The translations under genes and the position numbers were made by a program. Of a DNA stretch of 64,000 nt, positions 3,158-64,000 are shown in pieces; position 1 is the first letter of the stretch, and each line of letters starts with the position of its first letter. Below the pieces are notes generated by a model that was not told where the DNA came from, did not search any database, and was given only the letters and a program-made list of their open reading frames with translations. This stretch comes from Haplodiscus bocki (taxonomy: Eukaryota), in contig OZ296648.1 of the NCBI GenBank assembly GCA_965655095.1, positions 79,980,001-80,044,000 on the forward strand. Direction: 5' to 3'.

Positions 3158-3247
3158 TAGACGCTCAAAAGTTTTGACCAAAATTTATTAGAACTCCCCT
3201 GGTAGACGCTCAAAAGTTTTGACCAAAATTTATTAGAACTCCCATGG
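3158..3247 (+). repeat. 45-bp tandem duplication (2 copies, 1 mismatch)
   Basis: TAGACGCTCAAAAGTTTTGACCAAAATTTATTAGAACTCCC(C/A)TGG at 3158 and 3203. Confidence 0.95.
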
Positions 3248-11508: not shown

Positions 11509-11590
11509 GCACATTTTCGAAAAAGCCAAAAAACACCATTTGCAAATACCGCACATTTTCGAAAAAGCCAAAAAACACCATTTGCAAATA
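11509..11590 (+). repeat. 42-bp tandem duplication
   Basis: GCACATTTTCGAAAAAGCCAAAAAACACCATTTGCAAATA at 11509 and 11551. Confidence 0.95.
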
Positions 11591-34149: not shown

Positions 34150-37100
34150 AGTCCTCAAATGCTCCTCCAAACCTGGCGAAGGCAATTTTGACAACCCTGG
34201 CAAAACTGTCGGAAATCTTCAAAGTCTTTTTCCTCTAAGTCCGACAAATGCTCGAAACTTATATTTTTTTCCAAAATGAATCGTTTTTCCCAAAAATGAT
34301 CCTCTTGATATGTAGATTTCAGCTTTGACAACACTACTGTTTTTTTCCGCCAGACATGATCGCAAGATAACAGTTTTCCCCAAACGTTTCTTTAGGCACG
34401 TGGAATGGAGTTTCGACAACCCTGCCATGTAACTGTCAATAAACTTCAAAGTTTTTTCACTCAAAGTCCGAAAACGACTGAAAAAGTCCTATTTTCAAAC
34501 AAAGTGAAAATTTTAGATCAAAAGAAACTTCTGGAGACGTAGAATGCGCTTTTGACAACACTGCCATTTTTTTTGCCAAACAAACGAAGAAGATGGGGAA
34601 ACTTATAATTTTAGAATTAAAATTTCTACCACGATGTCCGAAAATCCTTGCAAGAAATTTTTTTTTCCAATTTTTTTGCCTGAATTTTTCCTCCGGACTT
34701 GTATAATGCAAGTTTCAAAACCCTGTTGATTTTTTTTTCAAAAATCCGACCGTTTCTTTGCCTATAGTCCAAAATAAAAAACAAAAAATTTATATCACAA
34801 CACATGTCATGGAATTGTTCCTCTTGACCCGTAGATTGATTTTTTGACATCTCTGTTTGAAGTTTTTGTCCCGATGTCCGAAAACACTTTAAGAAAAACA
34901 ATTAAAAAATATTTTCCTAAAGTGTTCATCCGGACATATAATTTGTAGATATGACAACACTGCTGTCAACCTCTCGCTGAAATTCTGAAAAAAACTTGAC
35001 TAACGATAGCTACCCTCGATATTTTTTCTCTTGAAAGTGTTCCTCTGGACTTGTATAATGCAAGTTTTGCAACCCTGCTGGTGTTGTTTTGTCCAAAATC
35101 AGAAGTTTTTTTAGCTCAAACCCCGGAAATAAACGAAAAACTGCTGAAAATGTGTTTCGCAAAAATAAAACTTTTTCTCTGGACTTGTATGAAACGAGTT
35201 TGACAATGCTGTTGGTAATTTGTTGTAAAGAAGAACAAATGTTTTGCGGAGATTTTCTTCGCCTGGTTCCGGAAAAGTTGGGCTCAAAATCTGGAAAAAA
35301 AGGAAAAGGGATGAAAAATTCACAAAGAAGTCCTCAAAAAATGCCGTCCGACTGGCAGATTGTAGTTTTGACAAGCTGACGAAGGTTTTCCGCCAAAAAT
35401 TCAAAAATAGTTTTGAAAAAGGGCCCATCTTGGAAATTTTTCTTAGAAAGCAGTTCTGATATTTCTGCTAAAAATTTCAGGTCTTTCAATTTAAGCCCAA
35501 AAACAATCTTTCGACGTACGGAAAAGTTTTAAAAATTGAAGAACTATTCAGAGTTTTAAAAGTCTTCGAAAAAAGCTACCGGAATTCGCCGAAGCAGTTC
35601 TGACAAAACTGCCGAAAGACACTCAGTGGAGTCCGAAATATATTTGCTCATAGCCAAAAAAAAGTACAGAAAACATTAATTTTTTGAAAATTGATAGATC
35701 CTCCTCGTAATCTTTGCCAAAAAAACGAAAAACTTGGGAAGCATAGATTTTTTTTGGATTGAAAAGTTTCTCTCAAAATCATCTTCTGAAAACGTAAAAT
35801 GTGGCTATCACAACACTGCCAAAAACCTCTTGCTGAAATTACCAAAGAATTTGGAAGACATAATTTTTTTGGAACAAAAGAACTCCCTCAAAAAAATCGT
35901 CTGGAGACGTAGGAGGTTTTGACAACATTATTGAAAGTCTTCTGTCAAAAAATGGAACCTTTTCTGCTCAGCTTTCGAAAACGTCCAAAATACATGTAAT
36001 TCTCCAATGAACAAATTTTCCTCAAAACTTTCCGCCATACAAGCGCAATGCTGTTTTGAGAACCCTACTTCACAAACATTGTCTACAGTATGAAAGATTT
36101 CCGCTCGAATTCCGTTCTTTTTTCAAATTGTTTTTCTTTGAACAATATAAAACTTTTCTCTTATATTGTTCTTCTGATTTAGAATGAAGGTTTGTCAATC
36201 ATGGCGCAACATGTTTGCGAAAAATCTGAATTTTTTCCGTCTAAAGTGCGAACTTCATCGATGAAATATGAAAAACCAAGGAAAGTTCCTGGAAGTGTTC
36301 TTCCGGACACGTAGAATCCACTTTTGACAAAACTACCGAAAAACTTTTCCAATCCGGTTTTCTCAAAAATATTGCTTATAAGAAACATTCCTCAGAAAAT
36401 TCCACCGGAGACGTGAGAAGTTTTGACGCTCCTGCCAAAATTTTTTCAATTAAAATCCAAAAAGTTTCACTCAAAAATCGAAAGCCGAAAATTTGTCGAA
36501 AAAGTCCGAAATCATGCTGCTCAATTTCGACAAATACTTGAAAAACACCTACTTTTAAATAGGAGTGAAAATTTTCTGAATGAAAATGATCCGCTGGGGA
36601 TGTAGATTGAGGTTCTGATGACACTGTCAAGAATAATTTGCAGAAAGTACGAAAAAAGATGGAAAATAAAGATTTTCTTGGATTTTAAAAATTCTCTCAG
36701 AAAAATCCCCTAAGCACGTAGAATGCGGTTATGACAACCCAGCCCTTTTTTCGCCGTAAAGGTAAAAAGACTTCAAAAAAAGTTTTTCTTGAAGAAAAAA
36801 CATCCTAAAAGCGTTCATCTGGAGACATAGGAAGCAGTTTCGGGAATTCTGCCCAAAATCATTCATTGAAAGTCCAAAACAATTTCACTCAAAGTCCGTA
36901 TAGGTTTTAAAAATGGAACTATACTCAAGACTGTAAAAAGTCCCCAAACTCCTCTTCCAGACACGGCGAATGCGGTTAAGACAACACTGCCGTAGAAGTC
37001 TTGATAATGTCTGAAAAAAACTCAATCAAAAAAAAATTCTCATTGAAACGAAAATTCTGTACTCTGGATTTGTGGAATCCACGTTTCACAACCCTGTCGA

Positions 37101-37300
37101 AAATTTTTGACCGGAAACTGAAAATTTTTTGCCTATAGTCCAAGTTTCATCTGAAAAAAACCTGTTTTTCTACCAAAGATTTCATCAGAAATTTCATTTG
37201 TAACCGTATATTGCGTTTTTGATAACTTTGCCGAAAATTTACTGCCTAATTCTTGAAAACTTTAGCTCATTAAGCGAAAAAAAAACGGAAAAAAAGTTAA
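34150..37300 (+). repeat. Divergent satellite fringe: ~35-bp core separated by variable A/T-tract spacers
   Basis: About 20 degenerate copies of C(C/T)GGACACGTAGAATGCAGTTTTGACAACACTGCCGAAA (e.g. 34531, 34693, 35045, 35901, 36303, 36957, 37064) at ~90-230-bp spacing, with no ~900-bp periodicity. Confidence 0.85.
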
Positions 37301-40300
37301 CAAAAGCAACATAACATGGAGAGTCCCGTCGTAGACCTAGATTGCAGATTTGACAACTGTGTCCAGACTTCAGTGCCTAGTTTCGGAAAACTATAGCTCA
37401 AACTTTTAAGATAAAATAGAAAAAAAACGTTTTCAACAAAACAGATGCCCCGAACTGTACATTTGGAACAGCACATCGTAGTTTTTACAATCCTGCTGAA
37501 CTTTTCCCACATAAAAACCTAGAGTACTAAAAACAGTGGTTTTTAACAGTAAAAAGTTTTCCTGAAAATGTTCATATGGAGACGTGGAACGCAGTTTCGA
37601 CATTCCCGCTTTATATTTTCAACAAAAGTCTAAAAAAGAATCACTAAACGTGAAAGTTTTTTGGAATGGAAAACTACTCAGAAAAATAAAAGTACTCAAA
37701 TTGCTCCGCTGGACATGGTGAATGCACTTACAGCAACAGATACGACAAGCTGTCCAAGAAGTCCCCCGAAATTTTTGTTAAAAGTTGGCGAACACTGAAT
37801 AAATGGATCATTTTATCAAAAACGATTTTTCCCCCAAATTAATCCTCTGGAGTCGTCGGATGTGGTTTTGACAACACTGCTGAAAATTTGAATACACTTG
37901 GAGGATGATAAATTTCTCATTCGTTTTTTGTCCTGAAGTTGTTCCTCTGGACTTATGTAATGCAGATTTCGCAACAACATAGAAACTTTTTTGTCGAAAA
38001 TCCGATATTTTGTCGCGTTCAGTCCGAAAACTACTTCAAAAAACAAGTTATCACCGAATATATCATCAAGATAGTCATTTGGATTCGTAGATTGGGATTT
38101 TGAAATTTCTGCCGAGAGTTTCTAGCCAAGTTTTTGAAAATGTGAGCTCGTAAGGCAAAAGAGTAACTGGGAAAAAAGCAACAAAAGAAACATACCCTAG
38201 AATGTAGCTTCGGACTACCAGATTGCAGTTTTCTCAAAGGTGTCAAGAATTCAGTGCCATGTTCGGGGAAACTATGGCCTAAACTTTTAAAAGAAAATAG
38301 AAAAAAAACGTTTTCACCGAAAAAAAATATGCCTAATATTGTACCTCTGGACCAGTAGATTGTAGTTTTCACAACTTTGCCGAAAGTTTCCCGCGAAAAG
38401 TCCTAGAACACTAAACACATTAGTTTTTGTCAGTAAAAAAGTTTTCCTTAAAGTGTTCATATGGAGATGTGGACGAGATGTGGAAAGCAGTTTGGACATT
38501 CCCGCTTTAAATTTTCAACAATAGTCTAAAAAGGATCACCAAAGGTGAAAGTTTTTTGGCATGGAAAACTATTAGGAAAATTAAAAGTCCTTGAATTGCA
38601 CCGCTGGACATGGTGAATGCACTTACAGCAACAGATATGAGAAGCTGTCCAAGATGTCCCCCAAAATTTTTGTTAAAATCCGCAAGTCCTGAATAAATGC
38701 ATCATTTTATGAAAAACGAATTTTCCCCCCAAATTGATCCTCTAGAGTCGTCGGATGTGGTTTTGACAACACTGCTGAACATTTGAAAACACTTGGAGGA
38801 TGATAATTTTCTCATTCGTTTTTTGTCCTGAAGTTGTTCCTCTGGACTTATGTAATGCAGATTTCGCAACAACATAGAAACTTTTTTGTCGAAAATCCGA
38901 CATTTTGTCAAGACTAGTCCAGATACTGCTTCCAAAAAACAAGTCAACACAAAATAGATCATCAAGATAATCATTTGGATTGGTAGATTGCATTTATGAA
39001 ATTTCTGCCGAGATTTTCTTGCCAAACTTTTGAGAATGTTAGCTCGTCAGCCAAAAGAGTAATTGGAAAAAAACCAACAAGAGAAACATATCCTAGAATG
39101 TAGCTTCGGACTACCAAATTGCAGTTTTCGCAAAGGCGTCAAGATTTCAGTGCAATCTTCCGGGAAACTATGGCTCAAACCTTTGCAAAAAAATAGAAAA
39201 GACGTTTCCACTAAAACGTATGCCCTAAATTGTACGTCCGGATTGGTGGATTGCAGTTTTCACAAATCTGGCGAAAAGTTTCCGCCAAAAGTGCTACAAT
39301 ACTAATTACATTAGTTTCTCTCAGTAAAAAGTTTTCCTTAAAATGTTCATAAGGAAATGCGGAAAACGGTCTGGACATTTTTGCTACAAATTTTTAGACA
39401 AAGTCCAAAAACACACTGAGTCCGAAAACTTTTTGAGACGAGAAACTCTTCAGAGTAATGAAAGTCCCCAAAAGGCTCCGCCGGACTTGGTGAAAGCAAT
39501 TAGAGCAACATAACGGAGAATCTGATGAAAACTTCCGCCGAAATGTTTCACAAAATTCCGGAAATACTGAATAAATGCATCATTTTATCAAAAACTGCAT
39601 CGTTAAAAATCCGCAGGCACTGAATAAATGCATCGATTTATCAAAGAAAAAAAATCCCCTAAATTGTTTCTCCGGAGATGTAGAATGTGGTTTCCGAAAC
39701 ACTACTGAAAATCCAAACAAACTTGGATGATCATAATTTTCCTCATTAGTTTTTTTGCCTGAAAATGTTCATCTGGAATTATATAAGGCAGATTTTAAAA
39801 AAATAAAAAAATTTTTTTGTCAAAACTCCGACATTTTGTCGCGTTTAGTCCGAAAACTATTGCAAAAATCAAGTTATCACAAAATAGATAATCAAGATAA
39901 TCTTCTGGATTCGTAGATTGCAATTATGAAATTTTCGCCGAGACTCTCCAGACAAAATTTCAAAAATGTTAGCTTCTGCGGGCAGCAAGAGTAATTGGAA
40001 AGAAATTTACCAAATGAAACATCCTCCAGAAGGTATCTTCAGGCCGCTAGATTGCAGCTTGGCAACTGTGTTGAGATTCTAGTGCCAGGTTCCGGAAAAC
40101 CATGGCTCAGACGTTTACTGGAAAATCGGAAAAAAAGGTTTTCACTAAAACAGATGCCCTGAAATATACATTTAGACCGGTAGATTGTACTTTTCAAAAA
40201 CATGCTGAAACTTTCTCGTCAAAAGTCCTAGAGTAATAAAAACAGCAGTTTTTAACAGTAAAAAAAATTCCTTAGAATGTTCATATGGAGACGTGGAAAA

Positions 40301-43300
40301 CAGTTTGGACATTCTTGCTTTATATTTTCATTGAAAGTCTAAATAGAATCAGTAAATGTGAAAATTTTGCGGAATGGAAGAACTATTCAGAAAATTAAAA
40401 GTCCTCGAATTGATCCGCTGGACACGCTGAATGCACTTACAGCAACAGATACGAGAAGCTGTCCAAGAATTCCCCGGAAGTTTTTGTTAAAAGTCCGCAA
40501 GCACTGAATGAATGCAAGATTTCATCAAAAAAAAACAATTTTTCCCTCAAGTTGATCCTGTGGAGGAGTCGAGAGTGGTTTTGAGAAGACTGCTGAAAAT
40601 CCAAAGACACATAGGAGATGACAGTTTCTCTCATTTGTTATTTCTCTTGAAGTTGTACCTCTGGACTTATAGAATGCAGATTTCACAACAATGTGGGAAT
40701 TTTTTGTCGAAAGTCCAACATTTTGACGCGTTCAGTCCGAAAACTACTTCAAAAAACAAGTTATCACCGATTGTATCATCAAGATAGTCATTTGGATTCG
40801 TAGATTGGGATTTTGAAATTTCTGCCGAGAGTTTCTAGCCAAGTTTTTGAAAATGTGAGCTCGTAAGGCAAAAGAGTAATTGGAAAAAAAACCAACAAGA
40901 GAAACATACCCTAGAATGTAGCTTCGGACTACAAAATTGCAGTTTTCGCAAAGGCGTCAAGATTTCAGTGCCATCTTCCGGGAAACTATGGCTCAAACCG
41001 TTGCAAAAAAATAGAAAAGACGTTTCCACTAAAACGTATGCCCTAAATTGTACGTCCGGATTGGTGGATTGCAGTTTTCACAAATCTGGCGAAAAGTTTC
41101 CGCCAAAGTGCTACAATGCCAATTACAGTAGTTTCTCTCAGTAAAAAGTTTTCCTTAAAATGTTCATAAGGAAATGCGGAAAACGGTCTGGACATTTTTG
41201 CTAAAAATTTTCAGAAAAAGTCCAAAAATACACTGAGTCCGAAACCTTTTTGAGACGAGAAACTCTTCAGAGTAATGAAAGTCCCCAAAAGGCTCCGCCG
41301 GACATGGTGAATGCAATTAGAGCAACATAACGGAGAATCTGATGAAAACTTCCGCCGAAATGTTTGACGAAATTCCGGAAATACTGAATAAATGCATCAT
41401 TTTATCAAAAACTGCATCGTTAAAAATCCGCAGGTACTGAATAAATGCATCGCTTTATCAAAGAAAAGAAATCCCCTAAATTGATTCTCCAGAGATGTAG
41501 AATGTGGTTTCCGAAACACTTCTGAAAATCCAAACATACTTGGATGATCATAATTTTCCTCATTAGTTTTTTTGCCTGAAAATGTTCATCTGAACTTATA
41601 TAAGGCAGATTTTAAAAGATTATAGAAATTTTTTTGTCAAAACTCCGACATTTTGTCGCGTTTAGTCCGAAAACTATTACAAAAATCAAGTTATCACAAA
41701 ATAGATAATCAAGATAATCTTCTGGATTCGTAGATTGCAATTATGAAATTTTCGCCGAGACTCTCCAGACAAAATTTCAAAAATGTTAGCTTCTGCGGGC
41801 AGCAAGAGTAATTGGAAAGAAATTTGCCAAATGAAACATCCTCCAAAAGGTATCTTCAGGCCGCTAGATTGCAGCTTGGCAACTGTGTTGAGATTCTAGT
41901 GCCAGGTTCCGGAAAACCATGGCTCAGACGTTTACTGGAAAATTGGAAAAAACGTTTTCACTAAAACAGATGCCGTGAAATATACATTTAGACCGGTAGA
42001 TTGTACTTTTCAAAAACATGCTGAAATTTTCTCGTCAAAAGTCCTAGAGTAATAAAAACAGCAGTTTTTAACAGTAAAAAAAAATTCCTTAAAATGTTCA
42101 AATGGAGACGTGGAAAACAGTTTGGACATTCTTGCTTTATATTTTCATTGAAAGTCTAAATAGAATCAGTAAATGTGAAAATTTCGCGGAATGGAAGAAT
42201 TATTCAGAAAATTAAAAGTCCTCGAATTGATCCGCTGGACACGCTGAATGCACTTACAGCAACAGATACGAGAAGCTGTCCAAGAAGTCCCCCGAAGTTT
42301 TTGTTAAAAGTCCGCAAGCACTGAATAAATGCAAGATTTTATCAAAAAAAACCATTTTTCCCTCAAGTTGATCCTGTGGAGGCGTCGAGAGTGGTTTTGA
42401 GAAGACTGCTGAAAATCCAAAGACACATAGGGGATGACAGTTTCTCTCATTCGTTATTTCTCTTGAAGTTGTACCTCTGGACTTATAGAATGCAGATTTC
42501 ACAACAATGTGGGAATTTTTTGTCGAAAGTCCAACATTTTGTCGCGTTCAGTCCGAAAACTACTTCAAAAAACAAGTTATCACAAAACAGATAATCAAGA
42601 TAATCTTCTGGATTCGTAGATTGCAATTATGAGTTTTTCGCCGAGACTCTCCAGACAAAATTTCAAAAATGTTAGCTTCTGCGGGCAGCAAGAGTAATTG
42701 GAAAGAAATTTACCAAATGAAACATCCTCCAGAAGGTATCTTCACGCCGCTAGATTGCAGCTTGGCAACTGTGTTGAGATTCTAGTGCCAGGTTCCGGAA
42801 AACCATGGCTCAGACGTTTACTGGAAAATTGGAAAAAAAGGTTTTCACTAAAACACATGCCCTGAAATATACATTTAGACCGGTAGATTGTACTTTTCAA
42901 AAACATGCTGAAATTTTCTCGTCAAAAGTCCTAGAGTAATAAAAACAGCAGTTTTTAACAGTAAAAAAAAATTCCTTAAAATGTTCATATGGAGACGTGG
43001 AAAACAGTTTGGACATTCTTGCTTTATATTTTCATTGAAAGTCTAAATAGAATAAGTAAATGTGAAAAATTTGCGGAATGGAAGAACTATTCAGAAAATT
43101 AAAAGTCCTCGAATTGATCCGCTGGACACGCTGAATGCACTTACAGCAACAGATACGAGAAGCTGTCCAAGAAGTCCCCCGAAGTTTTTGTTAAAAGTCC
43201 GCAAGCACTGAATAAATGCAAGATTTTATCAAAAAAAAACCATTTTTCCCTCAAGTTGATCCTGTGGAGGCGTGGAGATTGGTTTTGAGAAGACTGCTGA

Positions 43301-46300
43301 AAATCCAAATACACATAGGTGATGACAGTTTTTCTCATTCGTTATTTCTCTTGAAGTTGTACCTCTGGATTTATATAATGCAGATTTCACAACAATGTGG
43401 GAATTTTTTGTCGAAAGTCCAACATTTTGTCGCGTTCAGTCCGAAAACTACTTCGAAAAACAAGTTATCACAGAATATATCATCAAGATAGTCATTTGGA
43501 TTCGTAGATTGGGATTTTGAAATTTCTGCCGAGAATTTCTAGCCAAGTTTTTGAAAATGTGAGCTCGTAAGGCAAAAGAGTAATTGGAAAAAAAACCAAC
43601 AAGAGAAACATACCCTAGAATGTAGCTTCGGACTACAAAATTGCAGTTTTCGCAAAGGCGTCAAGATTTCAGTGCCATCTTCCGGGAAACTATGGCTCAA
43701 ACCGTTGCAAAAAAATAGAAAAGACGTTTCCACTAAAACGTATGCCCTAAATTGTACGTCCGGATTGGTGGATTGCAGTTTTCACAAATCTGGCGAAAAG
43801 TTTCCGCCAAAGTGCTACAATGCCAATTACAGTAGTTTCTCTCAGTAAAAAGTTTTCCTTAAAATGTTCATAAGGAAATGCGGAAAACGGTCTGGACATT
43901 TTTGCTAAAAATTTTCAGACAATGTCCAAAAATACACTGAGTCCGAAACCTTTTTGAGACGAGAAACTCTTCAGAGTAATGAAAGTCCCCAAAAGGCTCC
44001 ACCGGACATGGTGAATGCAATTAGAGCAACATAACGGAGAATCTGATGAAAACTTCCGCCGAAATCTTTGACAAAATTCCGGAAATACTGAATAAATGCA
44101 TCATTTCATCAAAAACTACATCGTTAAAAATCCGCAGGTACTGAATAAATGCATCGCTTTATCAAAGAAAAAAAATCCCCTAAATTGATTCTCCGGAGAT
44201 GTAGATTGTGGTTTCCGAAACACTACTGAAAATCCAAACATACTTGGATGATCATAATTTTCCTCATTAGTTTTTTTGCCTGAAAATGTTCATCTGGACT
44301 TATATAAGGCAGATTTTAAAAGAATATAGAAATTTTTTTGTCAAAACTCCGACATTTTGTCGCGTTTAGTCCGAAAACTATTACAAAAATCAAGTTATCA
44401 CAAAATAGATAATCAAGATAATCTTCTGGATTCGTAGATTGCAATTATGAATTTTTCGCCGAGACTCTCCAGACAAATTTCCAAAAATGTTAGCTTCTGC
44501 GGGCAGCAAGAGTAATTGGAAAGAAAATTACTAAATGAAACATCCTCCAGAAGGTATCTTCAGGCCGCTAGATTGCAGCTTGGCAACTGTGTTGAGATTC
44601 TAGTGCCAGGTTCCGGAAAACCATGGCTCAGACGTTTACTGGAAAATTGGAAAAAAAGGATTTCACTAAAGCAGATGCCCTGAAATATACATTTAGACCG
44701 GTAGATTGTACTTTTCAAATACATGCTGAAATTTTCTCGTCAAAAGTCTGAGAGTAATAAAAACAGCAGTTTTTAACAGTGAAAAAATTTTCCTTAAAAT
44801 GTTCATATGGAGACGTGGAAAACAGTTTGGACATTCTTGCTTTATTTTTTCATTGAAAGTCTAAATAGAATCAGTAAATGTGAAAATTTCGCGGAATGGA
44901 AGAATTATTCAGAAAATTAAAAGTCCTCGAATTGATCCGCTGGACACGCTGAATGCACTTACAGCAACAGATACGAGAAGCTGTCCAAGAAGTCCCCCGA
45001 AGTTTTTGTTAAAAGTCCGCAAGTACTGAATAAATGCAAGATTTTATCAAAAAAAAACCATTTTTCCCTCAAGTTGATCCTGTGGAGGCGTGGAGAGTGG
45101 TTTTGAGAAGACTGCTGAAAATCCAAATACACATAGGTGATGACAGTTTTTCTCATTCGTTATTTCTCTTGAAGTTGTACCTCTGGATTTATATAATGCA
45201 GATTTCACAACAATGTGGGAATTTTTTGTCGAAAGTCCAACATTTTGACGCGTTCAGTCCGAAAACTACTTCAAAAAACAAGTTATCACCGATTGTATCA
45301 TCAAGATAGTCATTTGGATTCGTAGATTGGGATTTTGAAATTTCTGCCGAGAGTTTCTAGCCAAGTTTTTGAAAATGTGAGCTCGTAAGGCAAAAGAGTA
45401 ATTGGAAAAAAAACCAACAAGAGAAACATACCCTAGAATGTAGCTTCGGACTACCAAATTGCAGTTTTCGCATAGGCGTCAAGATTTCAGTGCCATCTTC
45501 CGGGAAACTATGGCTCAAACCTTTGCAAAAAAATAGAAAAGACGTTTCCACTAAAACGGATGCCCTAAATTGTACGTCCGGATTGGTGGATTGCAGTTTT
45601 CACAAATCTGGCGAAAAGTTTCCGCCAAAAGTGCTACAATACTAATTACATTAGTTTCTCTCAGTAAAAAGTTTTCCTTAAAATGTTCATAAGGAAATGC
45701 GGAAAACGGTCTGGACATTTTTGCTACAAATTTTTAGACAAAGTCCAAAAATACACTGAGTCCGAAACCTTTTTGAGACGAGAAACTCTTCAGAGTAATG
45801 AAAGTCCCCAAAAGGCTCCGCCGGACATGGTGAATGCAATTAGAGCAACATAACGGAGAATCTGATGAAAACTTCCGCCGAAATGTTTGACAAAATTCCG
45901 GAAATACTGAATAAATGCATCATTTTATCAAAAACTGCATCGTTAAAAATCCGCAGTTACTGAATAAATGCATCGCTTTATCAAAGAAAAAAAATCGCCT
46001 AAATTGATTCTCCGGAGATGTAGAATGTGGTTTCCGAAACACTACTGAAAATCCAAACATACTTGGATGATCATAATTTTCCTCATTAGTTTTTTTGCCT
46101 GAAAATGTTCATCTGGACTAATATAAGGCAGAATTTAAAAGAATATAGAATTTTTTTTGTCCAAACTCCGACATTTTGTCGCGTTTAGTCCGAAAACTAT
46201 TACAAAAATCAAGTTATCACAAAATAGATAATCAAGATAATCTTCTGGATTCGTAGATTGCAATTATGAATTTTTCGCCGAGACTCTCCAGACAAATTTC

Positions 46301-53100: not shown

Positions 53101-56100
53101 AAATGTTCAAATGGAGATTCGGAAAGCGGTTTGGACATTCTTGCTAAGAAATTTGAATGAAAGTCCAAAAAAACACTAAGTCCGAAACCTTTTGGAACGA
53201 AAAACTCTTCTGGGTGATGAAAGTCCCCAAAAGGCTCCGCCTGACATGGTGAATGTGAATGCAATTAGAGCAACATAACGGAGAATCTGATGAAAACTTC
53301 CGCCGAATATTTTGACAAAAATCCGGAATTAAAGAATAAATGCATCATTTTATCGAAAACTGTATCGCTAGAAGTCCGCAAGTACTGAATAAAAGCATCG
53401 TTTTACCATATAAAAAACTTCCCTCAAATTGATCATCTGGAGATAAAAATGTGGTTTTGACAACGCTGCTGAAAATCCAAAATCACTTGGATTATCATAA
53501 TTTTTTTCGGCGTGTTTTTTCTTGAAGTTCTTCCTCTGGACTTCTATGACGCAAATTTCACAACGGAAAAGAAAATTTTTTGTCAAAAGTTCAACACTTT
53601 GTCGCGTTTAGTCCGAAAACTGTCACAAAAATTAAGTTATGACAAAATAGATCATCAAGAAAATCATTTGTTTTCGTAGATTGAGATTTTGAAATTTCTG
53701 CCAAGATTTTCTTGCCAGAAATTTGAATTTGTGAGCTGGTAATGTAAAAGAGCAATTGGGAAAAAAGCTAAAATAAAAAACATACCCTAGAAAGTAGATC
53801 GGGACCGCTAGATTGCAGTTTTGATAACAGTGTCGAGACATTAGTGCCATGTTCCGGAAAACTATGGCTCGAACTTTTGAAAAAAAAATGGAAAAAACGT
53901 TTCCAACAAAACATATTCCTTAAATTGTACCTCCGGACCGGTAGATTGTAGTTTTCACAACCATGGCGAATAGTTGCCGCCAAAAGTCCTACCAGACTGA
54001 TTAAGGTAGTTTTTCTCAGTAAAAAGTTTACCTTAAAATGTTCATATGGAGATTCGGAAAGCGGTTCGGACATTCTTGCTAAATATTTTGAATTAAAGTC
54101 CAAAAAACACTAAGTCCGAAACATTTTGGAACAAAAAACTCTTCAGGGTAATGAAAGTCCCCAAAACGCTCCGCCGGACAAGGTGAATGCAATTAGAGCA
54201 ACATAACGGAGAATTTGGTGAAAACTTCTGCCGAAATTTTTGACAAAAACCCGGAAATACTGAATAAATGCATCATTTTATCAAACACTGTATCGCTAGA
54301 AAGCCGCAAATGCTGAATAAATGCATCGTTTTACCATATAAAAAATTTCCCTCAAATTGATCATCTGGAGATAAAAATGTGGTTTTGACAACGCTGCTGA
54401 AAATCCAAAATCACTTGGATTATCATAATTTTTTTCAGCGTGTTTTTTCTTGAAGTTCTTCCTCTGGACTTCTATGTCGCAGATTTCACAACAAAAAAGA
54501 GTTTTTTTGTCAAAAGTCCGACATTTTGTCGCGTTTATTCCGAAAAAAATTACACAAGATAAGTTATCACAAATTAGATCATCAAGAAAATCATTTGGAT
54601 TCGTAGATTGCGATTTTGAAACTTCTGCCGAGATTTTCTTGCCAGAATTTTGAATTTGTTAGCTGGTAATGTAAAAGAGTAATTGGGAAAAAAGCTAACA
54701 TAAGAAACATACCCTAGAAAGTAGATTGGGACCGCTGAATTGCAGTTTTGATAACAGTGTTGAGACATTACTGCCATGTTCCAGAAAACTATGGCTCGAA
54801 CTTTTGGAAAAAACTCGAAAAACTGTTTTCACCTAAACGTATGCCTTAAATTGTACCTCCGGACCGGTAGAGTGTAGTTTTCACAACCATGGCGAACAGT
54901 TTCCGCCAAAACTCCTACGAGACTGATTAAGATAGTTTTTCTCAGTAAAAAGTTTACCTTAAAATGTTCAAATGGAGATTCGGAAAGCGGTTTGGACATT
55001 CTTGCTAAATATTTTGATTGAAAGTCCAAAAAAACACTGAGGCCGAAACCTTTTGGAACGAAAAACTCTTCTGGGTGATGAAAGTCCCCAAAAGGCTCCG
55101 CCTGACATGGTGAATGTGAATGCAATTAGAGCAACATAACGGAGAATCTGATGAAAACTTCCGCCGAATATTTTGACAAAAATCCGGAATTAAAGAATAA
55201 ATGCATCATTTTATCGAAAACTGTATCGCTAGAAGTCCGCAAGTACTGAATAAAAGCATCGTTTTACCACAAAAAAATTCCCTCAAACTGATCATCGGGA
55301 GTTAAAAATGTGGTTTTGACAACGCTGCTGAAAATCCAAAATCACTTGGATTATCATAATTTTTTTCGGCGTGTTTTTTCTTGAAGTTCTTCCTCTGGAC
55401 TTCTATGACGCAGATTTCACAACGGAAAAGAAAACTTTTTGTCAAAAGTCCGACATTTTGTCGCGTTTGGTTTGAAAACTGTCACAAAAAATAAGTTATG
55501 ACAAAAAAGATCATCAAGAAAATCATTTGTATTCGTAGATTGAGATTTTGAAATTTCTGCCAAGATTTTCTTGCCAGAAATTTGAATTTGTGAGCTGGTA
55601 ATGTAAAAGAGTAATTGGGAAAAAAGCTAAAATAAAAAACATACCCTAGAAAGTAGATCGGGACCGCTAGATTGCAGTTTTGATAAAAGTGTCGAGACAT
55701 TAGTGCCATGTTCCGGAAAACTATGGCTCGAACTTTTGAAAAAAAAATTGGAAAAAACGTTTCCAACAAAACATATTCCTTAAATTGTACCTCCGGACCG
55801 GTAGATTGTAGTTTTCACAACCATGGCGAATAGTTGCCGCCAAAAGTCCTACCAGACTGATTAAGGTAGTTTTTCTCAGAAAAAGTTTACCTTAAAATGT
55901 TCATATGGTGATTCGGAAAGCGGTTCGGACATTCTTGCTAAATATTTTGAATTAAAGCCAAAAAACACTAAGTCCGAAACATTTTGGAACAAAAAACTCT
56001 TCAGGTTAATGAAAGTCCCCAAAAGGCTCCGCCGGACAAGGTGAATGCAATTAGAGCAACATAACGGAGAATTTGGTGAAAACTTCCGCCGAAATTTTTG

Positions 56101-59100
56101 ACAAAAACCCGGAAATACTGAATAAATGCATCATTTTATCAAACACTGTATCGCTAGAAAGCCGCAAATGCTGAATAAATGCATCGTTTTACCATATAAA
56201 AAATTTTCCTCAAATTGATCATCTGGAGATAAAAATGTGGTTTTGACAACGCTGCTGAAAATCCAAAATCACTTGGATTATCATAATTTTTTTCAGCGTG
56301 TTTTTTCTTGAAATTCTTCCTCTGGACTTCTATGACGCAGATTTCACAACGGAAAAGAAAATTTTTTGTCAAAAGTTCGACACTTTGTCGCGTTTAGTCC
56401 GAAAACTGTCACAAAAATTAAGTTATGACAAAATAGATCATCAAGAAAATCATTTGTATTCGTAGATTGAGATTTTGAAATTTCTGCCAAGATTTTCTTG
56501 CCAGAAATTTGAATTTGTGAGCTGGTAATGTAAAAGAGTAATTGGGAAAAAAGCTAAAATAAAAAACATACCCTAGAAAGTAGATCGGGACCGCTAGATT
56601 GCAGTTTTGATAACAGTGTCGAGACATTAGTGCCATGTTCCGGAAAACTATGGCTCGAACTTTTGAAAAAAAAATTGGAAAAAACGTTTCCAACAAAACA
56701 TATTCCTTAAATTGTACCTCCGGACCGGTAGATTGTAGTTTTCACAACCATGGCGAATAGTTGCCGCCAAAAGTCCTACCAGACTGATTAAAGTAGTTTT
56801 TCTCAGTAAAAAGTTTACCATAAAATGTTCATATGGTGATTCGGAAAGCGGTTCGGACATTCTTGCTAAATATTTTGAATTAAAGTCCAAAAAACACTAA
56901 GTCCGAAACATTTTGGAACAGAAAACTCTTCAGGGTAATGAAAGTCCCCAAAACGCTCCGCCGGACAAGGTGAATGCAATTAGAGCAACATAACGGAGAA
57001 TTTGGTGAAAACTTCCGCTGAAATTTTTGACAAAAACCCGGAAATACTGAATAAATGCATCATTTTATCAAACACTGTATCGCTAGAAAGCCGCAAGTGC
57101 TGAATAAATGCCTCGTTTTACCATATAAAAAATTTCCCTCAAATTGATCATCTGGAGATAAAAATGTGGTTTTGACAACGCTGCAGAAAATCCAAAAACA
57201 CTTGGAAGATCCTAATTTTTATCATTCTTGTTTTCTCTTGAAGTTGTTCCTCTGGACTTCTATAATGTGGATTTCACAACAATATAGAAAATTTTTTCTC
57301 AAAAGTCCGACACTTTGTCGCGTTTAGTTTGAAAACTGTCACAAAAATTAAGTTATGACAAAAAAGATCATCAAGAAAATCATTTGTTTTCGTAGATTGA
57401 GATTTTGAAAATTCTGCCGAGATTTTTTTGCCAGAAATTTTATTTTGTCAGCTGGTAGTGTAGAAGAGTAAATGGGAAAAAAGCTAAAATTAAAAACAAA
57501 CCCTAGAAAGTAGATCGGGACCGCTAGATTGCAGTTTTGATAACAATGTCGAGACATTAGTGCCATGTTCCGGAAAACTATGGCTCAAAATGTTGAAAAA
57601 AAACTGGAAAAAACGTTTCCAACAAAACATATTCCTTAAATTGTACCTCCGGACCGGTGGGTTGTAGTTTTCACAACCATGGCGAACAGTTTCCGCCAAA
57701 GGTCCTACCAGACTGACTAAGGTAGTTTTTCTCAGTAAAAAGTTTACCTTAAAATGTTCATATGGAGATTCGGAAAGCGGTTTGGACATTCTTGCTAAAT
57801 ATTTTGAATTAAAGTCCAAAAAACACTAAGTCCGAAACATTTTGGAACAAAAAACTCTTCAGGGTAATGAAAGTCCCCAAAACGCTCCGCCGGACAAGGT
57901 GAATGCAATTAGAGCAACATAACGGAGAATTTGGTGAAAACTTCTGCCGAAATTTTTGACAAAAACCCGGAAATACTGAATAAATGCATCATTTTATCAA
58001 ACACTGTATCGCTAGAAAGCCGCAAATGCTGAATAAATGCATCGTTTTACCATATAAAAAATTTCCCTCAAATTGATCATCTGGAGATAAAAATGTGGTT
58101 TTGACAACGCTGCTGAAAATCCAAAATCACTTGGATTATCATAATTTTTTTCAGCGTGTTTTTTCTTGAAGTTCTTCCTCTGGACTTCTATGTCGCAGAT
58201 TTCACAACAAAAAAGAGTTTTTTTGTCAAAAGTCCGACATTTTGTCGCGTTTATTCCGAAAAAAATTACACAAGATAAGTTATCACAAATTAGATCATCA
58301 AGAAAATCATTTGGATTCGTAGATTGCGATTTTGAAACTTCTGCCGAGATTTTCTTGCCAGAATTTTGAATTTGTTAGCTGGTAATGTAAAAGAGTAATT
58401 GGGAAAAAAGCTAACATAAGAAACATACCCTAGAAAGTAGATTGGGACCGCTGAATTGCAGTTTTGATAACAGTGTTGAGACATTACTGCCATGTTCCGG
58501 AAAACTATAGCTCGAATTTTTGAAGAAAACTGGAAAAAACGTTTTCAACAAAACATATTCCTTACATTGTATCTCCGGACCGGTAGATTGTAGTTTTCGC
58601 AACCATGGCGAATAGTTTCTGCCAAAAGTCCTACCAGACTGATTAAAGTAGTTTTTCTCACTAAAAATTTTTATTCAAAATGTTCATATGGAGTTCGGAA
58701 AGCGGTTTGGACATTCTTGCTAAAAATTTTGAATGAAATTCCAAAAAACACTAAGTCCGAAACATTTTGGAACAGAAAACTCTTCAGGGTAATGCAAGTC
58801 CCCAAAAGGCTCCGCCGGACATAGTGAATGCAATTAGAGCAACATAACGGAGAATCTGATGAAAACTTCCGCCGAAAATTGGACAAAAACCCGGAAATAC
58901 TGAATAAATGCATCATTTTATCAAAAACACTATCGCTAGAAAACCGCAAATGCTGAATAAATGCATCGTTTTACCATATAAAAATCTTCCTTCAAATTGA
59001 ACATCTGGAGATAAAAATGTGGTTTTGACAACGCTGCAGAAACTCCAAAACCACTTGGAAGATCATAATTTTTCTCAGCGTGTTCTCTCTTGAAGTTTTT

Positions 59101-62100
59101 CCTCTGGACTTCTCTGACGCAAATTTCACAACAAAAAAGAAAACTTTTTGTCAAAAGTCCGACATTTTGTCGCGTTTATTCCGAAAATAAATTACACAAA
59201 TTAAGTTATCACAAATTAGATCATCAAGAAAATCATTTGGATTCGTAGATTGCGATTTTGCAAATTCTGCCGAGGTTTCCTTGCCAGAAATTTGAATTTG
59301 TTAGCTGGTAATGTAAAAGAGTAATTGGGAAAAAAGCTAACATAAGAAACATACCCCAGAAAGTAGACTGCGACCGCTAGATTGCAGTTTTGATAACAGA
59401 GTCGAGACATTAGTGCCAGGTTCCGGAAAACTATGGCTCGAACATTTGAAGACAACTGGAAAAAACGTTTTCACTTTAACATATGCCTTAAATTGTACCT
59501 CTAGACCGGTAGGTTGTAGTTTTCACAACCATGGCAAACAATTTCCGCCGAAAGTCCTACGAGACTGATTGAGGTAGTTTTTCTCAGTAATAAGTTTACC
59601 TTAAAATGTTCATAAGGAGATTCGGAAAGCGGTTTGGACGTTCTTGCTAAAAATTTTGAATGAAAGTCCAAAAAACACTAAGTCCGAAACATTTTGGAAC
59701 AGAAAACTCTTCAGGGTAATGCAAGTCCCCAAAAGGCTCCGCCGGACATGGTGAATGCAATTAGAGCAACATAACGGAGAATCTGGTGAAAACTTCCGCC
59801 GAAATATTTGACAAAAATCCGGAAATAATGAATAAATGCATCATTTTATCAAAAACTGTATCGCTAGGAATCCGCAAGTACTGAAAGAATGCATCGTTTT
59901 ACCAAAAAAAAATTCCCCCAAATTGATCATCTGGAGATAAAAATGTGGTTTGACAATGCTGCTGAAAATCCAAAAACACTTGGAAGATCATAATTTTTCT
60001 CAGCGTGTTCTCTCTTGAAGTTTTTCTTCTGGACTTCTATGTCGCAGATTTCACAACAAAAAAGAGTTTTTTTGTCAAAAGTCCGACATTTTGTCGCGTT
60101 TATTCCGAAAAAAATTACACAAGATAAGTTATCACAAATTAGATCATCAAGAAAATCATTTGGATTCGTAGATTGCGATTTTGAAACTTCTGCCGAGATT
60201 TTCTTGCCAGAATTTTGAATTTGTTAGCTGGTAATGTAAAAGAGTAATTGGGAAAAAAGCTAACATAAGAAACATACCCTAGAAAGTAGATTGGGACCGC
60301 CAGATTGCAGTTTTGATAACAGTGTCGAGACATTAGTGCCATGTTCCGGAAAACTATGGCTCGAACTTTTGAAGAAAACTGGAAAAAACGTTTTCATTTA
60401 AACGTATGCCTTAAATTGTACCTCCAGACCGGTAGGTTGTAGTTTGCACAACCATGGCGAACAGTTTCCGCCAAAAATCCTACGAGACTGATTAAGGTAG
60501 TTTTTCTCAGTAAAAAGTTTAGCTTAAAATGTTCATATGGAGGTTCGGAAAGCGGTTTGGACATTATTGCTAAAAATTTTGAATGAAAGTCCAAAAAACA
60601 CTGAGTCCGAAACCTTTTGGAACGAAAAACTCTTCAGGATAATGAAAGTCCCCAAAAAGCTCCGCCTGACATGGTGAATGCAATTAGAGCAACATAACGG
60701 AGAATCTGATGAAAACTTCCGCCGAAATTTTGACAAAAAGCCGGAAATACTGAATAAATGCATCATTTTATCAAAAATTGTATCGCTAGAAAGCCTCAAG
60801 TGCTGAATAAATGCATCGTTTTACCATATAAAAATTTTCCCTCAAAATGATCATCTGGAGATAAAAATGTGGTTTTGACAACGCTGCAGAAAATCCAAAA
60901 ACACTTGGAAGATTGTAGTTTTTATCATTCGTATTTTCTCTTGAAGTTGCTCCTCCGGACTTCTACAATGCGGATTTCACAACATTATGGAAAGGTGTTT
61001 GTCAAAAGTTCGACAATTTGTCGCGTTTAGTCCGAAAAATAATACAAAAATTACGTTATCACAAAATAGATCATCAAGACAATCTTTTGCATTCAGAGAC
61101 TGAAGTTATGAAATATCTGCCGAGTTTTTTTCCAGATATTTGAAATTGTTAGCTGGTAATGTAAAAAAGTAAATGAGAAAAAAGCTAACTTAAGAAACAT
61201 ACCCTGGAAACTAGATTGGGACCGCTAGATTGCAGTTTTGATAACAGTGTCGAGACATTAGTGCCATGTTCCAGAAAACTATGGCTCGAACTTTTGAAAA
61301 AAACTAGAAAAAACGTTTTCACGTAAACGTATGCCTTAAATTGTACCTCCGGACCGGTAGACTCTAGTTTTCACAACCATGGCGAACAGTTTCCGCCAAA
61401 AGTCCTACGAGACTGATTAAGATAGTTTTTCTCAGTAAAAAGTTTAGCTTAAAATGTTCATATGGAGATTCGGAAAGCGGTTTGGACATTATTGCTAAAA
61501 ATTTTGAATGAAAGTCCAAAAAACACTGAATCCGAAACCTTTTGGAACGAAAAACTCTTCAAGATAATGAAAGTCCCCAAAAAGCTCCGCCTGACATGGT
61601 GAATGCAATTAGAGCAACATAACGGAGAATCTGATGAAAACTTCCGCCGAAATTTTTGACAAAAATCCGGAAATACTGAATAAATGCATCATTTTATCAA
61701 AAAATGTATCGATAGAAATCCGCAAGTACTGAAAAAATGCATCGTCTTACCATAAAAAAAATTTCCCTCAAAGTGATCATCTGGAGATAAAAATGCGGTT
61801 TTGACAACGCTGCAGAAAATCCAAAACACTTGGAAGATCTTAATTTTTATCATTCTTGGTTTCTCTTGAAGTTCTTCCTCTGGACTTCAATGACGCAGAT
61901 TTCACAACAATAAAGAAATTTTTTGTCAAAAGTCCGACACTTTGTCGCGTTTAGTCCGAAAACTAATAAAAAAATTACGTTATTACACAATAGATCATCA
62001 AGACAATCATTTGTATTCGTAGATTGAGATTTTGAAATTTCTGCCAAGATTTTCTTGCCAGAAATTTGAATTTGTGAGCTGGTAATGTAAAAGAGTAATT

Positions 62101-64000
62101 GGGAAAAAAGCTAACATAAGAAACATACCCTAGAAAGTAGATTGGGACCGCCAGATTGCAGTTTTGATAACAGTGTCGAGACATTAGTGCCATGTTCCGG
62201 AAAACTATGGCTCGAACTTTTGAAGAAAACTGGAAAAAACGTTTTCATTTAAACGTATGCCTTAAATTGTACCTCCAGACCGGTAGGTTGTAGTTTGCAC
62301 AACCATGACGAACAGTTTCCGCCAAAAATCCTACGAGACTGATTAAGGTAGTTTTTCTCAGTAAAAAGTTTACCTTAAAACGTTCATATGGAGATTCGGA
62401 AAGCGGTTTGGACATTCTTGCTAAAAACTTTGATTGAAAGTCCAAAAAAACACTGAGGCTGAAACCTTTTGGAACGAAAAACTCTTCAGGGTAATGAAAG
62501 TCCCCGAAAGGCTCCGCCGGACATGGTGAGTGCATTTAGAGCAACATAACGGAGAATCTGATGAAAACTTCCGCCGAAACTTTTGACAAAAAACCGGAAA
62601 TACTGAATAAATGCATCATTTTATCAAAAACTGTATCGATAGAAATCCGCAAGTACTGAATAAATGCATCGTTTTAAAATATAAAAAATTTCCCTCAAAT
62701 TGATCATCTGGAGATAAAAGTTTGGTTTTGACAACGCTGCAGAAAATCCAAAAACACTTGGAAGATCATATTTTTTATCATTCGTGTTCTCTCTTGAAGT
62801 TTTTCCGCTGGACTTCTATGACGCAGATTTCACGACAAAAAAGAAAACGTTTTGTCAAAAGTCCGACATTTTGTCGCGTTTAATTTGAAAACTGTCACAA
62901 AAATTAAGTTATGACAAAAAAGATCATCAAGAAAATCATTTGTTTTCGTAGATTGAGATTTTGAAAATTCTGCCGAGATTTTTTTGCCAGAAATTTTATT
63001 TTGTCAGCTGGTAGTGTAGAAGAGTAAATGGGAAAAAAGCTAAAATTAAAAACAAACCCTAGAAAGTAGATCGGGACCGCTAGATTGCAGTTTTGATAAC
63101 AATGTCGAGACATTAGTGCCATGTTCCGGAAAACTATGGCTCAAAATGTTGAAAAAAAACTGGAAAAAACGTTTCCAACAAAACATATTCCTTAAATTGT
63201 ACCTCCGGACCGGTGGGTTGTAGTTTTCACAACCATGGCGAACAGTTTCCGCCAAAGGTCCTACCAGACTGACTAAGGTAGTTTTTCTCAGTAAAAAGTT
63301 TACCTTAAAATGTTCATATGGATATTCAGAAAGCGGTTTGGACATTCTTGCTAAAAATTTTGAAAGAAAGTCCAAAAAACACTGAGTCCGAAACCTTTTG
63401 GAACGAAAAACACTTCAAGGTAATGAAAGTCCCCGAAAGGCTCCGCCGGACATGGTGAGTGCAATTAGAGCAACATAACGGAGAATCTGATGAAAACTTC
63501 CGCCGAAACTTTTGACAAAAATCCGGAAATACTGAATAAATGCATCATTTTATCAAAAACTGTATCGATAGAAATCCGCAAGTACTGAATAAATGCATCG
63601 TTTTACCATATAAAAAATTTCCCTCAAAGTGATCATCTGGAGATAAAAATGCGGTTTTGACAACGCTGCAGAAAATCCAAAACACTTGGAAGATCTTAAT
63701 TTTTATCATTCTTGGTTTCTCTTGAAGTTCTTCCTCTGGACTTCTATGACACAGATTTCACAACAAAAAAGAAAACTTTTTGTCAAAAGTCCGACATTTT
63801 GTCGCGTTTAGTCCGAAAACTGTCACAAAAATTGAGTTATGACAAAATAGATCATCAAGAAAAATATTTGTATTCGTAGATTGAGATTTTGAAGTTTCTG
63901 CCGAGATTTTTTTGCCAAAAATTTGAATTTGTAAGCTGGTAATGTAAAAGAGTTTTTGGGAAAAAAGCTAAACTTAAAAACATACCCTAGAAAAAAGATC
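50161..64000 (+). repeat. Satellite domain 2: ~927-bp monomers, continues beyond the window
   Basis: Anchor at 50465, 51391, 52318, ~53242, 54176, ~55103, 56034, 56963, 57892, 58817, 59744, ~60667, ~61592, 62519, 63448 (period 923-934). Confidence 0.95.

What the first reader, a model, noticed from the sequence alone, without database searches (positions are those of the whole stretch)
34150..64000. Three-tier satellite whose evolutionary layers are laid out along the chromosome
Seen: one ~35-bp core (C(C/T)GGAC..GTAGA(A/T)TGCAGTTTTGACAAC.CTGCCGAAA) is spaced irregularly at the edge (34-37 kb). It then becomes fixed as 7 distinct variants per ~900-bp monomer (e.g. ~53242, 53437, 53536, 53667, 53800, 53933, 54046), and monomers form dimers and larger blocks. 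Known: divergent monomeric fringes flanking higher-order arrays characterise centromeric/pericentromeric satellites. Inference: this is the edge of a major heterochromatic, possibly centromeric, array, and the core's persistence amid variable spacers hints at a protein-binding box.
Basis: partly seen in the sequence, partly recalled or inferred. Interest (0 to 1): 0.7.

Follow-up and report, generated by a model that had tools for sequence, protein, structure and literature searches.

The report
Short layered satellite from old 135-bp family
This is a real stretch of non-coding tandem repeats whose roughly 926-base unit is a fossil string of seven old 135-base repeats, but it looks like a small local array of about 35-45 kb, one of many in this genome, and nothing shows that it is a centromere.

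Summary
From about 34,043 to the window end, one strand carries a tandem array. A 21-nt core occurs 57 times there and nowhere else (0 expected by chance). About 30 units of 880-935 bp each hold seven core-bearing subunits at fixed places.

The units fall into three variants. A and B are interleaved at 37.4-50.1 kb as 1.82-kb dimers inside a 4.52-kb five-unit block that is 97-100% alike between copies. C fills 50.2-64 kb at about 90% identity, with no regular higher order.

- The edge (34.0-37.4 kb) is mostly decayed copies of the same seven-subunit unit, not a pre-existing plain 130-bp fringe.
- Contig word depth in the organism's own runs suggests only about 40-50 units genome-wide, so the array probably ends a few kb past the window. 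It is not a major block.
- Between A, B and C the core has diverged as fast as the spacers.

New here: the subunits belong to an old, multi-locus ~135-bp satellite family. It also turned up in 20 contigs of a coral (Cyphastrea sp. 2) metagenome. Across that family the core is modestly better kept (62% against 54%).

The scan has noted similar hidden higher-order satellites on other pieces of this genome, and one unverified note describes what may be the same core. Centromere role: untested.

The parts
34043..37440 (+). Decayed left border of the array: about 27-30 contiguous, strongly diverged subunits spaced 85-175 bp. From about 34.9 kb the subunit types recur in the order of the seven-subunit unit, and the same type recurs at about 0.85-0.97 kb. 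36,718-37,440 is clearly an old unit with a deletion. The outermost 0.9 kb is undecided.
37441..50069 (+). Domain II: 14 units of two variants. A is 933 bp (starts 39216, 41034, 43738, 45556, 48254) and its copies are 97-100% alike. B is about 884 bp and its copies are 78-97% alike. A against B is 72-74%. The order is B B A B A B B A B A B B A B.
39216..50069 (+). Third tier: a 4.52-kb five-unit block (A B A B B) present about 2.4 times, containing 1.82-kb A+B dimers. The two units before it (37441-39215) are the tail of an older copy; the unit at 38325 is 96% like the unit at 47374.
50070..50198 (+). Solitary extra copy of subunit 1 (129 bp) at the joint between the two domains.
50199..64000 (+). 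Domain III: 15 units of variant C (923-935 bp, the last cut by the window end). Interior units are 87-98% alike, and the border units at 50199 and 51127 are the most diverged (80-92%). There is no regular order above the unit.
53911..54836 (+). Example unit (926 bp) with its seven 39-nt cores starting at 53933, 54046, 54174, 54364, 54464, 54596 and 54728. Subunit lengths are 113, 128, 190, 100, 132, 132 and 132 bp.
53933..53971 (+). Best-kept core of the unit (subunit 1). It matches 30 of 39 positions of the family consensus core CTGGACACGTAGAATGCAGTTTTGACAACCCTGCCGAAA.

Best explanation
Window 34,043-64,000 (+ strand, running off the window) is a non-coding, locus-specific satellite array.

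Shown:
- Its roughly 926-bp unit is a string of seven diverged subunits of 100-190 bp (mode 132).
- Each subunit is a member of an old ~135-bp tandem-repeat family. The family's best-kept part is a ~39-nt core.
- The same family forms other arrays, with their own higher orders, in contigs of a coral-holobiont metagenome. Canonical copies also sit at other loci of this organism.
- The seven-subunit order is shared by all three unit variants and by most of the decayed border.

Inferred history:
- A seven-subunit stretch of an already old array was re-copied as a block by unequal exchange or segmental duplication, and split into variants B, A and C.
- A and B units were then re-copied together as 1.82-kb dimers and a 4.52-kb five-unit block. 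This is the youngest layer.
- C spread next door as a separate domain.
- Copies at domain borders escaped later homogenisation and decayed. CpG sites decayed fastest.

Inferred size: about 40-50 units in the genome, so an array of roughly 35-45 kb.

Inferred function: none is needed. The better-kept core is a family-level legacy (past constraint, or fewer deletions than in the A/T-rich spacers). It is not under measurable selection in this array.
For: Tandem, single-strand and far beyond chance.

Three variants and their identities. Offset analysis. Seven cores at the same places in A, B and C.

The whole subunit is homologous, not only the core: spacer alignment z about 1.8, core about 3.

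Non-coding: no Rfam family at the gathering score and only sub-threshold noise at E up to 1, no tRNA, no ORF over 140 aa, and no Pfam hit for the three longest array ORFs.

Family: 20 contigs of metagenome Ga0126343 are 79-95% covered by same-strand units of about 135 bp. Their consensus matches the window's subunits at 53-75% of columns and 22-30 of 39 core positions (one A-variant subunit, sub7, matches only 16 of 39). Several contigs carry their own higher periods of 274-1397 bp, one of them at 96%. That metagenome is labelled Cyphastrea sp. 2 (bioRxiv 10.1101/391565).

Other loci in this organism: contigs from its runs match the subunit-1 core and then run on into canonical family sequence (CCTCTGGACACGTA and TTTTTCGCTCAA, table 7). 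CTGGACACGTA and TTCGCTCAA, which lie within those runs, occur nowhere in the window.

Small size: with depth about 38 for unique pieces, 132-168 for A/B pieces, and summed depth equal to 18 A/B and 24-32 C units.

No extra conservation of the core between A, B and C.

Border made of old units.
Against: - The right end of the array is outside the window.
- The size estimate rests on contig word depth, which the tool warns is one figure per contig. It would miss copies less than 85% alike.
- Between 34.0 and 36.7 kb, alignment scores to the unit (0.29-0.46 per base) barely exceed those of unrelated arrays of the family (0.20-0.38). There, the 'old units' reading rests on type order and spacing only.
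- With CpG columns removed, the core diverges somewhat less than the rest (0.150 against 0.221, p=0.03 in one of three comparisons). Weak constraint is therefore not excluded.
- No chromatin, cytological or RNA data exist here.
Confidence: 0.78

Rival explanations
1. Border of a major heterochromatic, centromeric or pericentromeric satellite block. The core would be the binding box of a centromere or heterochromatin protein.
For: Layered, nested architecture with older copies at borders. The family is multi-locus and carries a better-kept, almost deletion-free core (identity 0.617 against 0.542, p=0.002; deletions 1% against 7.5%). The window lies in the interior of a piece at least 175 Mb long (positions given).
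Against: Summed word depth equals only about 40-50 units in the genome. The core is not spared between A, B and C. There is no CENP-B box. This genome holds very many such arrays (192 scan notes fit 'satellite monomer'), so the architecture alone does not single out a centromere. Older copies at array borders are expected for any tandem array evolving by unequal exchange (my own knowledge of the Smith and Stephan models, not tested here).
Confidence: 0.08
2. Tandem array carried inside, or grown out of, a large transposon, as another scan note reports for a different satellite of this genome. It would then be part of a dispersed mobile element.
For: Scan note s1-382623 describes a hidden ten-monomer satellite inside a transposon arm on the same piece (unverified). 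The family occurs at many loci.
Against: No inverted or direct terminal repeat and no coding remnant adjoins the array start. No subunit occurs on either strand in the 34 kb to the left. The metagenome contigs are wall-to-wall array with no non-repeat portion inside their 1-2.8 kb.
Confidence: 0.08
3. Tandem array of functional small RNA genes or regulatory modules, with the core acting as a promoter or a folded RNA element.
For: A fixed-strand, conserved ~39-nt core with a short TGCAG...CTGC dyad in the consensus.
Against: No Rfam family reaches its threshold. The dyad pairs show no covariation: the complementary fraction equals the shuffled expectation. Units decay freely, including in the core. 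No RNA run holds the stretch, which is weak evidence.
Confidence: 0.03

Closest known systems
Primate alpha satellite (171-bp monomers, higher-order repeats, diverged layers on the flanks)
   Same: Short monomers that differ strongly from each other are re-copied as multi-monomer blocks, and the blocks are far more alike than the monomers inside them. Several distinct higher orders of one monomer family exist at different loci. Older, diverged copies sit at array borders. One short box is better kept than the rest.
   Different: The monomer is about 132-137 bp. Subunits inside the unit are far more diverged (cores match the family consensus at 22-30 of 39 positions). The array is tens of kb, not Mb. 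There is no CENP-B box and no evidence of centromere function. A further ~21-22-bp periodicity lies inside the monomer.
Meloidogyne tandem repeats that share a conserved 19-bp box and associate with CenH3 (PMC8097292; title and abstract seen)
   Same: A short conserved box embedded in otherwise divergent tandem repeats spread over many loci.
   Different: There the box-bearing repeats were linked to CenH3 by experiment. Here there are no chromatin data, and the box advantage is modest (62% against 54% pairwise identity).
Euchromatic tandem-repeat families with satellite features in Tribolium castaneum chromosome arms (PMC4675708; abstract seen)
   Same: Satellite-like arrays of modest length, scattered in chromosome arms next to ordinary and transposon-derived DNA.
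   Different: Unit length and sequence are unrelated. The present array has a fossil seven-subunit unit and a third tier of block duplication.
Other hidden higher-order satellites noted by this scan in the same genome (s1-381258, s1-354055, s1-381257, s1-354061)
   Same: Kilobase units built from 7-10 very old short monomers, non-coding, layered, with no centromere evidence.
   Different: Their reported monomer lengths differ (167-180 bp). Whether any of them shares this core is unknown. Note s1-354124 (core TGCAG-N11-CTGCA on another piece) may be the same family but could not be checked.

Membership tests
Satellite DNA with higher-order repeat organisation | Head-to-tail units on one strand, non-coding | tested here: met
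Satellite DNA with higher-order repeat organisation | Copies one higher-order period apart are much more alike than neighbouring lower-order units | tested here: met
   Units are 87-100% alike, whereas their seven subunits share mainly the core. Neighbouring A and B units are 72-74% alike, against 97-100% at offsets of 2, 3 and 5 units. Domain III has no regular order above the unit.
Satellite DNA with higher-order repeat organisation | Older, diverged copies at array borders | tested here: met
Centromeric or major heterochromatic satellite | Very large copy number (hundreds of kb to Mb of near-identical units) | tested here: not met
   summed contig word depth equals about 40-50 units at a single-copy depth of about 38. 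This is a rough figure, since depth is one value per contig.
Centromeric or major heterochromatic satellite | CenH3/CENP-A occupancy or cytological centromere position | not testable with these tools
   No chromatin or FISH data available.
Centromeric or major heterochromatic satellite | Known centromere-protein box (CENP-B box TTCGNNNNANNCGGG); a mammalian feature, so not strictly defining here | tested here: not met
   0 matches in the window.
Conserved-box satellite family | Box is better conserved than the rest across independent arrays | tested here: met
   0.617 against 0.542, p=0.002, with deletions at 1% against 7.5%. The difference is modest.
Conserved-box satellite family | Box is spared by substitutions within this array (ongoing constraint) | tested here: not met
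   equal divergence in core and rest between A, B and C; only a weak trend without CpG columns.
Transposon-borne tandem array | Transposon termini or genes bracketing the array | tested here: inconclusive
   Nothing at the left border. The right border is outside the window.
Tandem array of structured RNA genes | Match to an RNA family, or covariation that preserves a fold | tested here: not met

The most novel reading that the evidence does not exclude
The ~135-bp family with its ~39-nt core is a genome-wide satellite superfamily of this animal lineage. It would be comparable to alpha satellite: many loci, many different local higher orders, and presence in DNA from a coral holobiont. Its core (peak AGTTTTGACAA) would be the landing site of a chromatin or centromere protein in the active arrays, and the window would hold a retired, decaying offshoot.
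Probability: 0.1. Interest if true: 0.6.

Novelty: new member of a known kind. Interest (0 to 1): 0.3.

Why it matters
By itself this array is an ordinary small satellite locus. Its use is as a clean worked example of how a kilobase 'macrosatellite' unit arises from a fossil string of short monomers and is then re-copied in blocks.

The more useful result is the link to an old, multi-locus ~135-bp family with a moderately conserved, almost deletion-free core. That family was also recovered from a coral-holobiont metagenome. No paper in the searched library describes such a family. If whole-genome mapping or chromatin data tie it to centromeres, it would give a first sequence handle on centromere DNA in this poorly studied group. 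If not, it documents how much of this repeat-rich genome is neutral satellite turnover.

Tried and rejected
- Tandem Repeats Finder sees only a 129-bp, two-copy piece. Its longest period is 500, so the structure was worked out with k-mer distances, blastn, MAFFT and nhmmer instead.
- RNA gene array: no Rfam family at the gathering score, only sub-threshold noise at E up to 1, and no tRNA.
- Coding unit or gene-fragment satellite, as other arrays of this genome are said to be: no long ORFs and no Pfam hit for the three longest array ORFs. Three flank ORFs also had no Pfam hit.
- CENP-B box: absent.
- Hairpin or dyad in the core (TGCAG-N11-CTGC): present in the consensus only, with no covariation.
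- Transposon ends at the left border: none found.
- First idea that the whole edge is colinear decayed units: weakened by a control. Unrelated arrays of the family align to the unit almost as well. I kept the idea only where type order and spacing support it.
- My first assumption that the window has 15 exact matches to the scan pattern was wrong; it has 4. The absence of window-type units among the metagenome hits therefore says nothing about species identity.
- L010 and L021 (single isolated pattern matches with no subunit profile hit) are taken as chance matches.
- Organism: not determined. Other scan notes disagree, some saying coral and one saying acoel worm. An exact-protein look-up of a flank ORF found nothing. 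The metagenome contigs could come from the coral or from an animal living on it.
- Findings look-up by sequence: blank.
- Literature: no description of this family or of coral satellite higher orders was found.
That should have been read from file, and it is not repeated here.
Full report

Yes. The 21-nt core GTAGAWTGYAGTTTTSACAAC, with up to 3 mismatches, occurs 57 times. Every match is on the + strand between 34,312 and 63,233. None appeared in 100 dinucleotide-preserving shuffles (a looser search gave 60, again + strand only). A profile built from four subunits finds 103 hits, all on the + strand and all from 34.4 kb onward.

K-mer distance peaks are absent in the first 34 kb. They are sharp at 1818, 2704, 4516 and 7220 bp for 38-50 kb, and at 925-929, 1858 and 3716 bp for 50-64 kb. 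Tandem Repeats Finder sees almost nothing because its longest period is 500.

**2. Anatomy**

One 926-bp copy tiles 37,453-64,000 head to tail. Cutting at a common phase gives 30 pieces:

| Variant | Copies | Length | Location | Identity among copies |
|---|---|---|---|---|
| A | 5 | 933 bp | interleaved with B, 37,441-50,069 | 97-100% |
| B | 9 | about 884 bp | interleaved with A, 37,441-50,069 | 78-97% |
| extra subunit | 1 | 129 bp | 50,070-50,198 | - |
| C | 15 | 923-935 bp | 50,199-64,000 (last copy cut by the window end) | 87-98% in the interior |

Between variants, A against B is 72-74%, A against C 78-80%, and B against C 71-76%.

The order in the first domain is B B A B A B B A B A B B A B. 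Identity at an offset of five units averages 91% and reaches 100%. So there is a 4.52-kb five-unit block (A B A B B) present about 2.4 times, plus the tail of an older copy. It contains 1.82-kb A+B dimers.

In the C domain, identity is 89-91% at every offset, with two isolated close pairs. There is no regular order above the unit. The two C units next to the domain joint are the most diverged (80-92%), and the first two B units are likewise the outliers of their domain. Each domain therefore keeps its oldest copies at its border.

**3. The seven subunits**

Five are clear and two are weak. Subunit lengths are 113, 128, 190, 100, 132, 132 and 132 bp. The seven-subunit string therefore predates the split into A, B and C.

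The spacers are also homologous among subunits (alignment z about 1.8, against about 3 for the much shorter core). The whole ~130-bp subunit is an old repeat. It is not a box inserted into unrelated spacers. In an ungapped stack, the better-kept part runs from about 15 nt before the core to about 55 nt after its start.

**4. Is the core under constraint here?**

- Among the seven paralogous subunits the core carries more information: 0.82-0.97 bits per column, against 0.32-0.67.
- Between the orthologous columns of A, B and C the core has diverged exactly as much as the rest: 17.3 against 17.3%, 21.6 against 22.7%, and 26.5 against 26.4%.
- Within-variant diversity is only slightly lower in the core (0.093 against 0.114, p about 0.06).
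- The core holds twice the share of CpG columns. Leaving those columns out gives a weak trend: 0.147 against 0.170, 0.150 against 0.221 (p=0.03), and 0.204 against 0.258.
- Distinct indel events per column are 0.034 in the core against 0.051 in the rest.

I conclude that any constraint on the core in this array is weak or gone.

**5. The edge**

The zone 34,043-37,440 is wall-to-wall decayed subunits, not isolated cores. Each was assigned to its best-matching subunit type. Of 24 neighbouring pairs, 10 are in unit order, against 3.45 expected (p about 0.001). In arrays of the same family from elsewhere, 15 of 146 pairs are in order. The same type recurs at about 0.85-0.97 kb between 34.9 and 36.6 kb.

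A control tempers this. Unrelated arrays of the family align to the unit with 0.20-0.38 score per base. Edge pieces give 0.29-0.46, rising to 0.60-0.73 only for 36,718-37,439.

So the inner edge is certainly old units with deletions. The stretch 34.9-36.7 kb probably is too. The outermost 0.9 kb cannot be told apart from a plain old monomeric array. The first tier is thus not simply 'laid out' at the edge.

**6. A wider family**

An exact scan of public metagenome contigs for the core gave 22 loci. Twenty are from one metagenome, Ga0126343, which a preprint names as the Cyphastrea sp. 2 coral metagenome (bioRxiv 10.1101/391565). The other two are isolated matches without any subunit similarity, at chance level.

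- The twenty contigs (1.0-2.8 kb) are 79-95% covered by same-strand units, with a mode of 135-137 bp.
- Apart from the core they are not blastn-similar to the window.
- Their consensus is plainly the same repeat. Window subunits match it at 53-75% of columns, and at 22-30 of 39 core positions apart from one A-variant subunit (sub7) at 16 of 39.
- Units within a contig are hardly more alike than units from different contigs (0.60 against 0.565). These are very old, un-homogenised arrays.
- Several contigs nonetheless show their own higher periods (274-282, 398, 557, 680, 858 at 96%, 1046 and 1397 bp). The seven-subunit unit of the window is therefore one of many local higher orders of one family.
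- Across the family the core is modestly but significantly better kept (0.617 against 0.542 pairwise identity, p=0.002). It is almost free of deletions (1% against 7.5%). The peak is at AGTTTTGACAA (0.73). A second kept block lies around AATGTCCGAAA.

**7. The family at other loci of this organism**

The organism's own sequencing runs (contigs only) were laid on 48,254-54,253. Several contigs match only the subunit-1 core and then run on into CCTCTGGACACGTA upstream and TTTTTCGCTCAA downstream (table 7). These are canonical family sequences, and CTGGACACGTA and TTCGCTCAA within them occur nowhere in the 64-kb window.

A first-reader note on another piece of this genome (s1-354124) describes a satellite core TGCAG-N11-CTGCA. 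That fits this core (TGCAG-N11-CTGCC) but could not be verified.

**8. How big is the array?**

In the same laying, contigs that match unique parts of the locus exactly have word depth about 38-40 (two runs), 30-42 (a third) and about 12 (the fourth). Exact A/B pieces have 132-168, or 3.5-4.4 times single copy, which fits the five near-identical A copies in the window.

Depth was summed over bins and divided by single-copy depth and unit length. This gives about 18 A/B units (the window has 14) and 24-32 C units (the window has 15) (arithmetic mine). The tool warns that depth is one figure per contig, so this is rough. A megabase array would nevertheless give depths one to two orders higher.

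I infer a total of about 40-50 units, meaning the array ends a few kb beyond the window.

**9. What it is not**

- No Rfam family at gathering level, only sub-threshold noise at E up to 1.
- No tRNA.
- No ORF over 140 aa in the array, and no Pfam hit for the three longest.
- No CENP-B box.
- No covariation in the short dyad of the core.
- No terminal repeats or coding remnants at the left border, and no subunits in the 34 kb to the left.

**10. Reading and context**

The best-supported reading is a neutral, locus-specific satellite. It was born when a seven-monomer stretch of an old 135-bp array was re-copied as a block, later diversified, and was partly re-amplified.

The architecture is the same as that of alpha-satellite higher-order repeats. 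It is also what unequal exchange produces in any tandem array (my knowledge, not tested). This genome has very many such arrays: 192 scan notes fit 'satellite monomer'. Earlier follow-ups of several of them reached the same 'real, but no centromere evidence' verdict.

The library searches found no paper describing this family. The organism was not determined. Other notes say coral or acoel worm, and the metagenome contigs could be from the coral or from an animal living on it.

Noticed in passing
L001-L022 (metagenome contigs); weaker in window 34043-64000: Inside the ~135-bp monomer there is a deeper periodicity of about 21-22 bp. CCGAAAA recurs three times at 22-bp spacing in the family consensus. 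The self-match at lag 21-22 (0.31) is almost as strong as at lag 137 (0.327), against a background of 0.274. This may be a still older tier.
   Followed up: partly
L006, L001, L012, L014, L016, L020: Arrays of the same family in the Cyphastrea sp. 2 metagenome carry their own higher-order periods: 858 bp at 96%, 680-681 bp, 557 bp, 398 bp and 1397 bp. They differ from the window's seven-subunit unit.
   Followed up: partly
window 102-180 and 1038-1131: Two short arrays of a 16-bp repeat lie in opposite orientation about 0.9 kb apart (ATTTCAACCGC and its reverse complement GCGGTTGAAAT). This looks like the subterminal repeats of a foldback or MITE-like element.
   Followed up: no
window 37441-64000, core columns: CpG columns are twice as frequent in the cores as elsewhere (47 of 273 against 54 of 654) and diverge fastest. 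This fits methylation-type CpG decay and masks a slight sparing of the other core positions.
   Followed up: partly
window 50070-50198: A lone extra copy of subunit 1 sits exactly at the joint between the A/B domain and the C domain. The units next to the joint are the most diverged of their domains.
   Followed up: partly
window 3158-3249 and 11509-11590: Two near-perfect two-copy tandem duplications (45 bp at 97% and 42 bp at 100%) lie in the transposon-rich left flank.
   Followed up: no
L010 2651-2671, L021 2415-2435: Isolated exact matches to the 21-nt core lie in long contigs of two other metagenomes, with no subunit similarity around them. I took these as chance matches given the size of the collection.
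   Followed up: partly
whole genome (scan notes): Earlier scan notes disagree on the organism; some say reef coral and one says 'clearly an acoel worm'. The piece that holds this window is at least 175 Mb long, which my own knowledge says would be large for a stony-coral chromosome.
   Followed up: no
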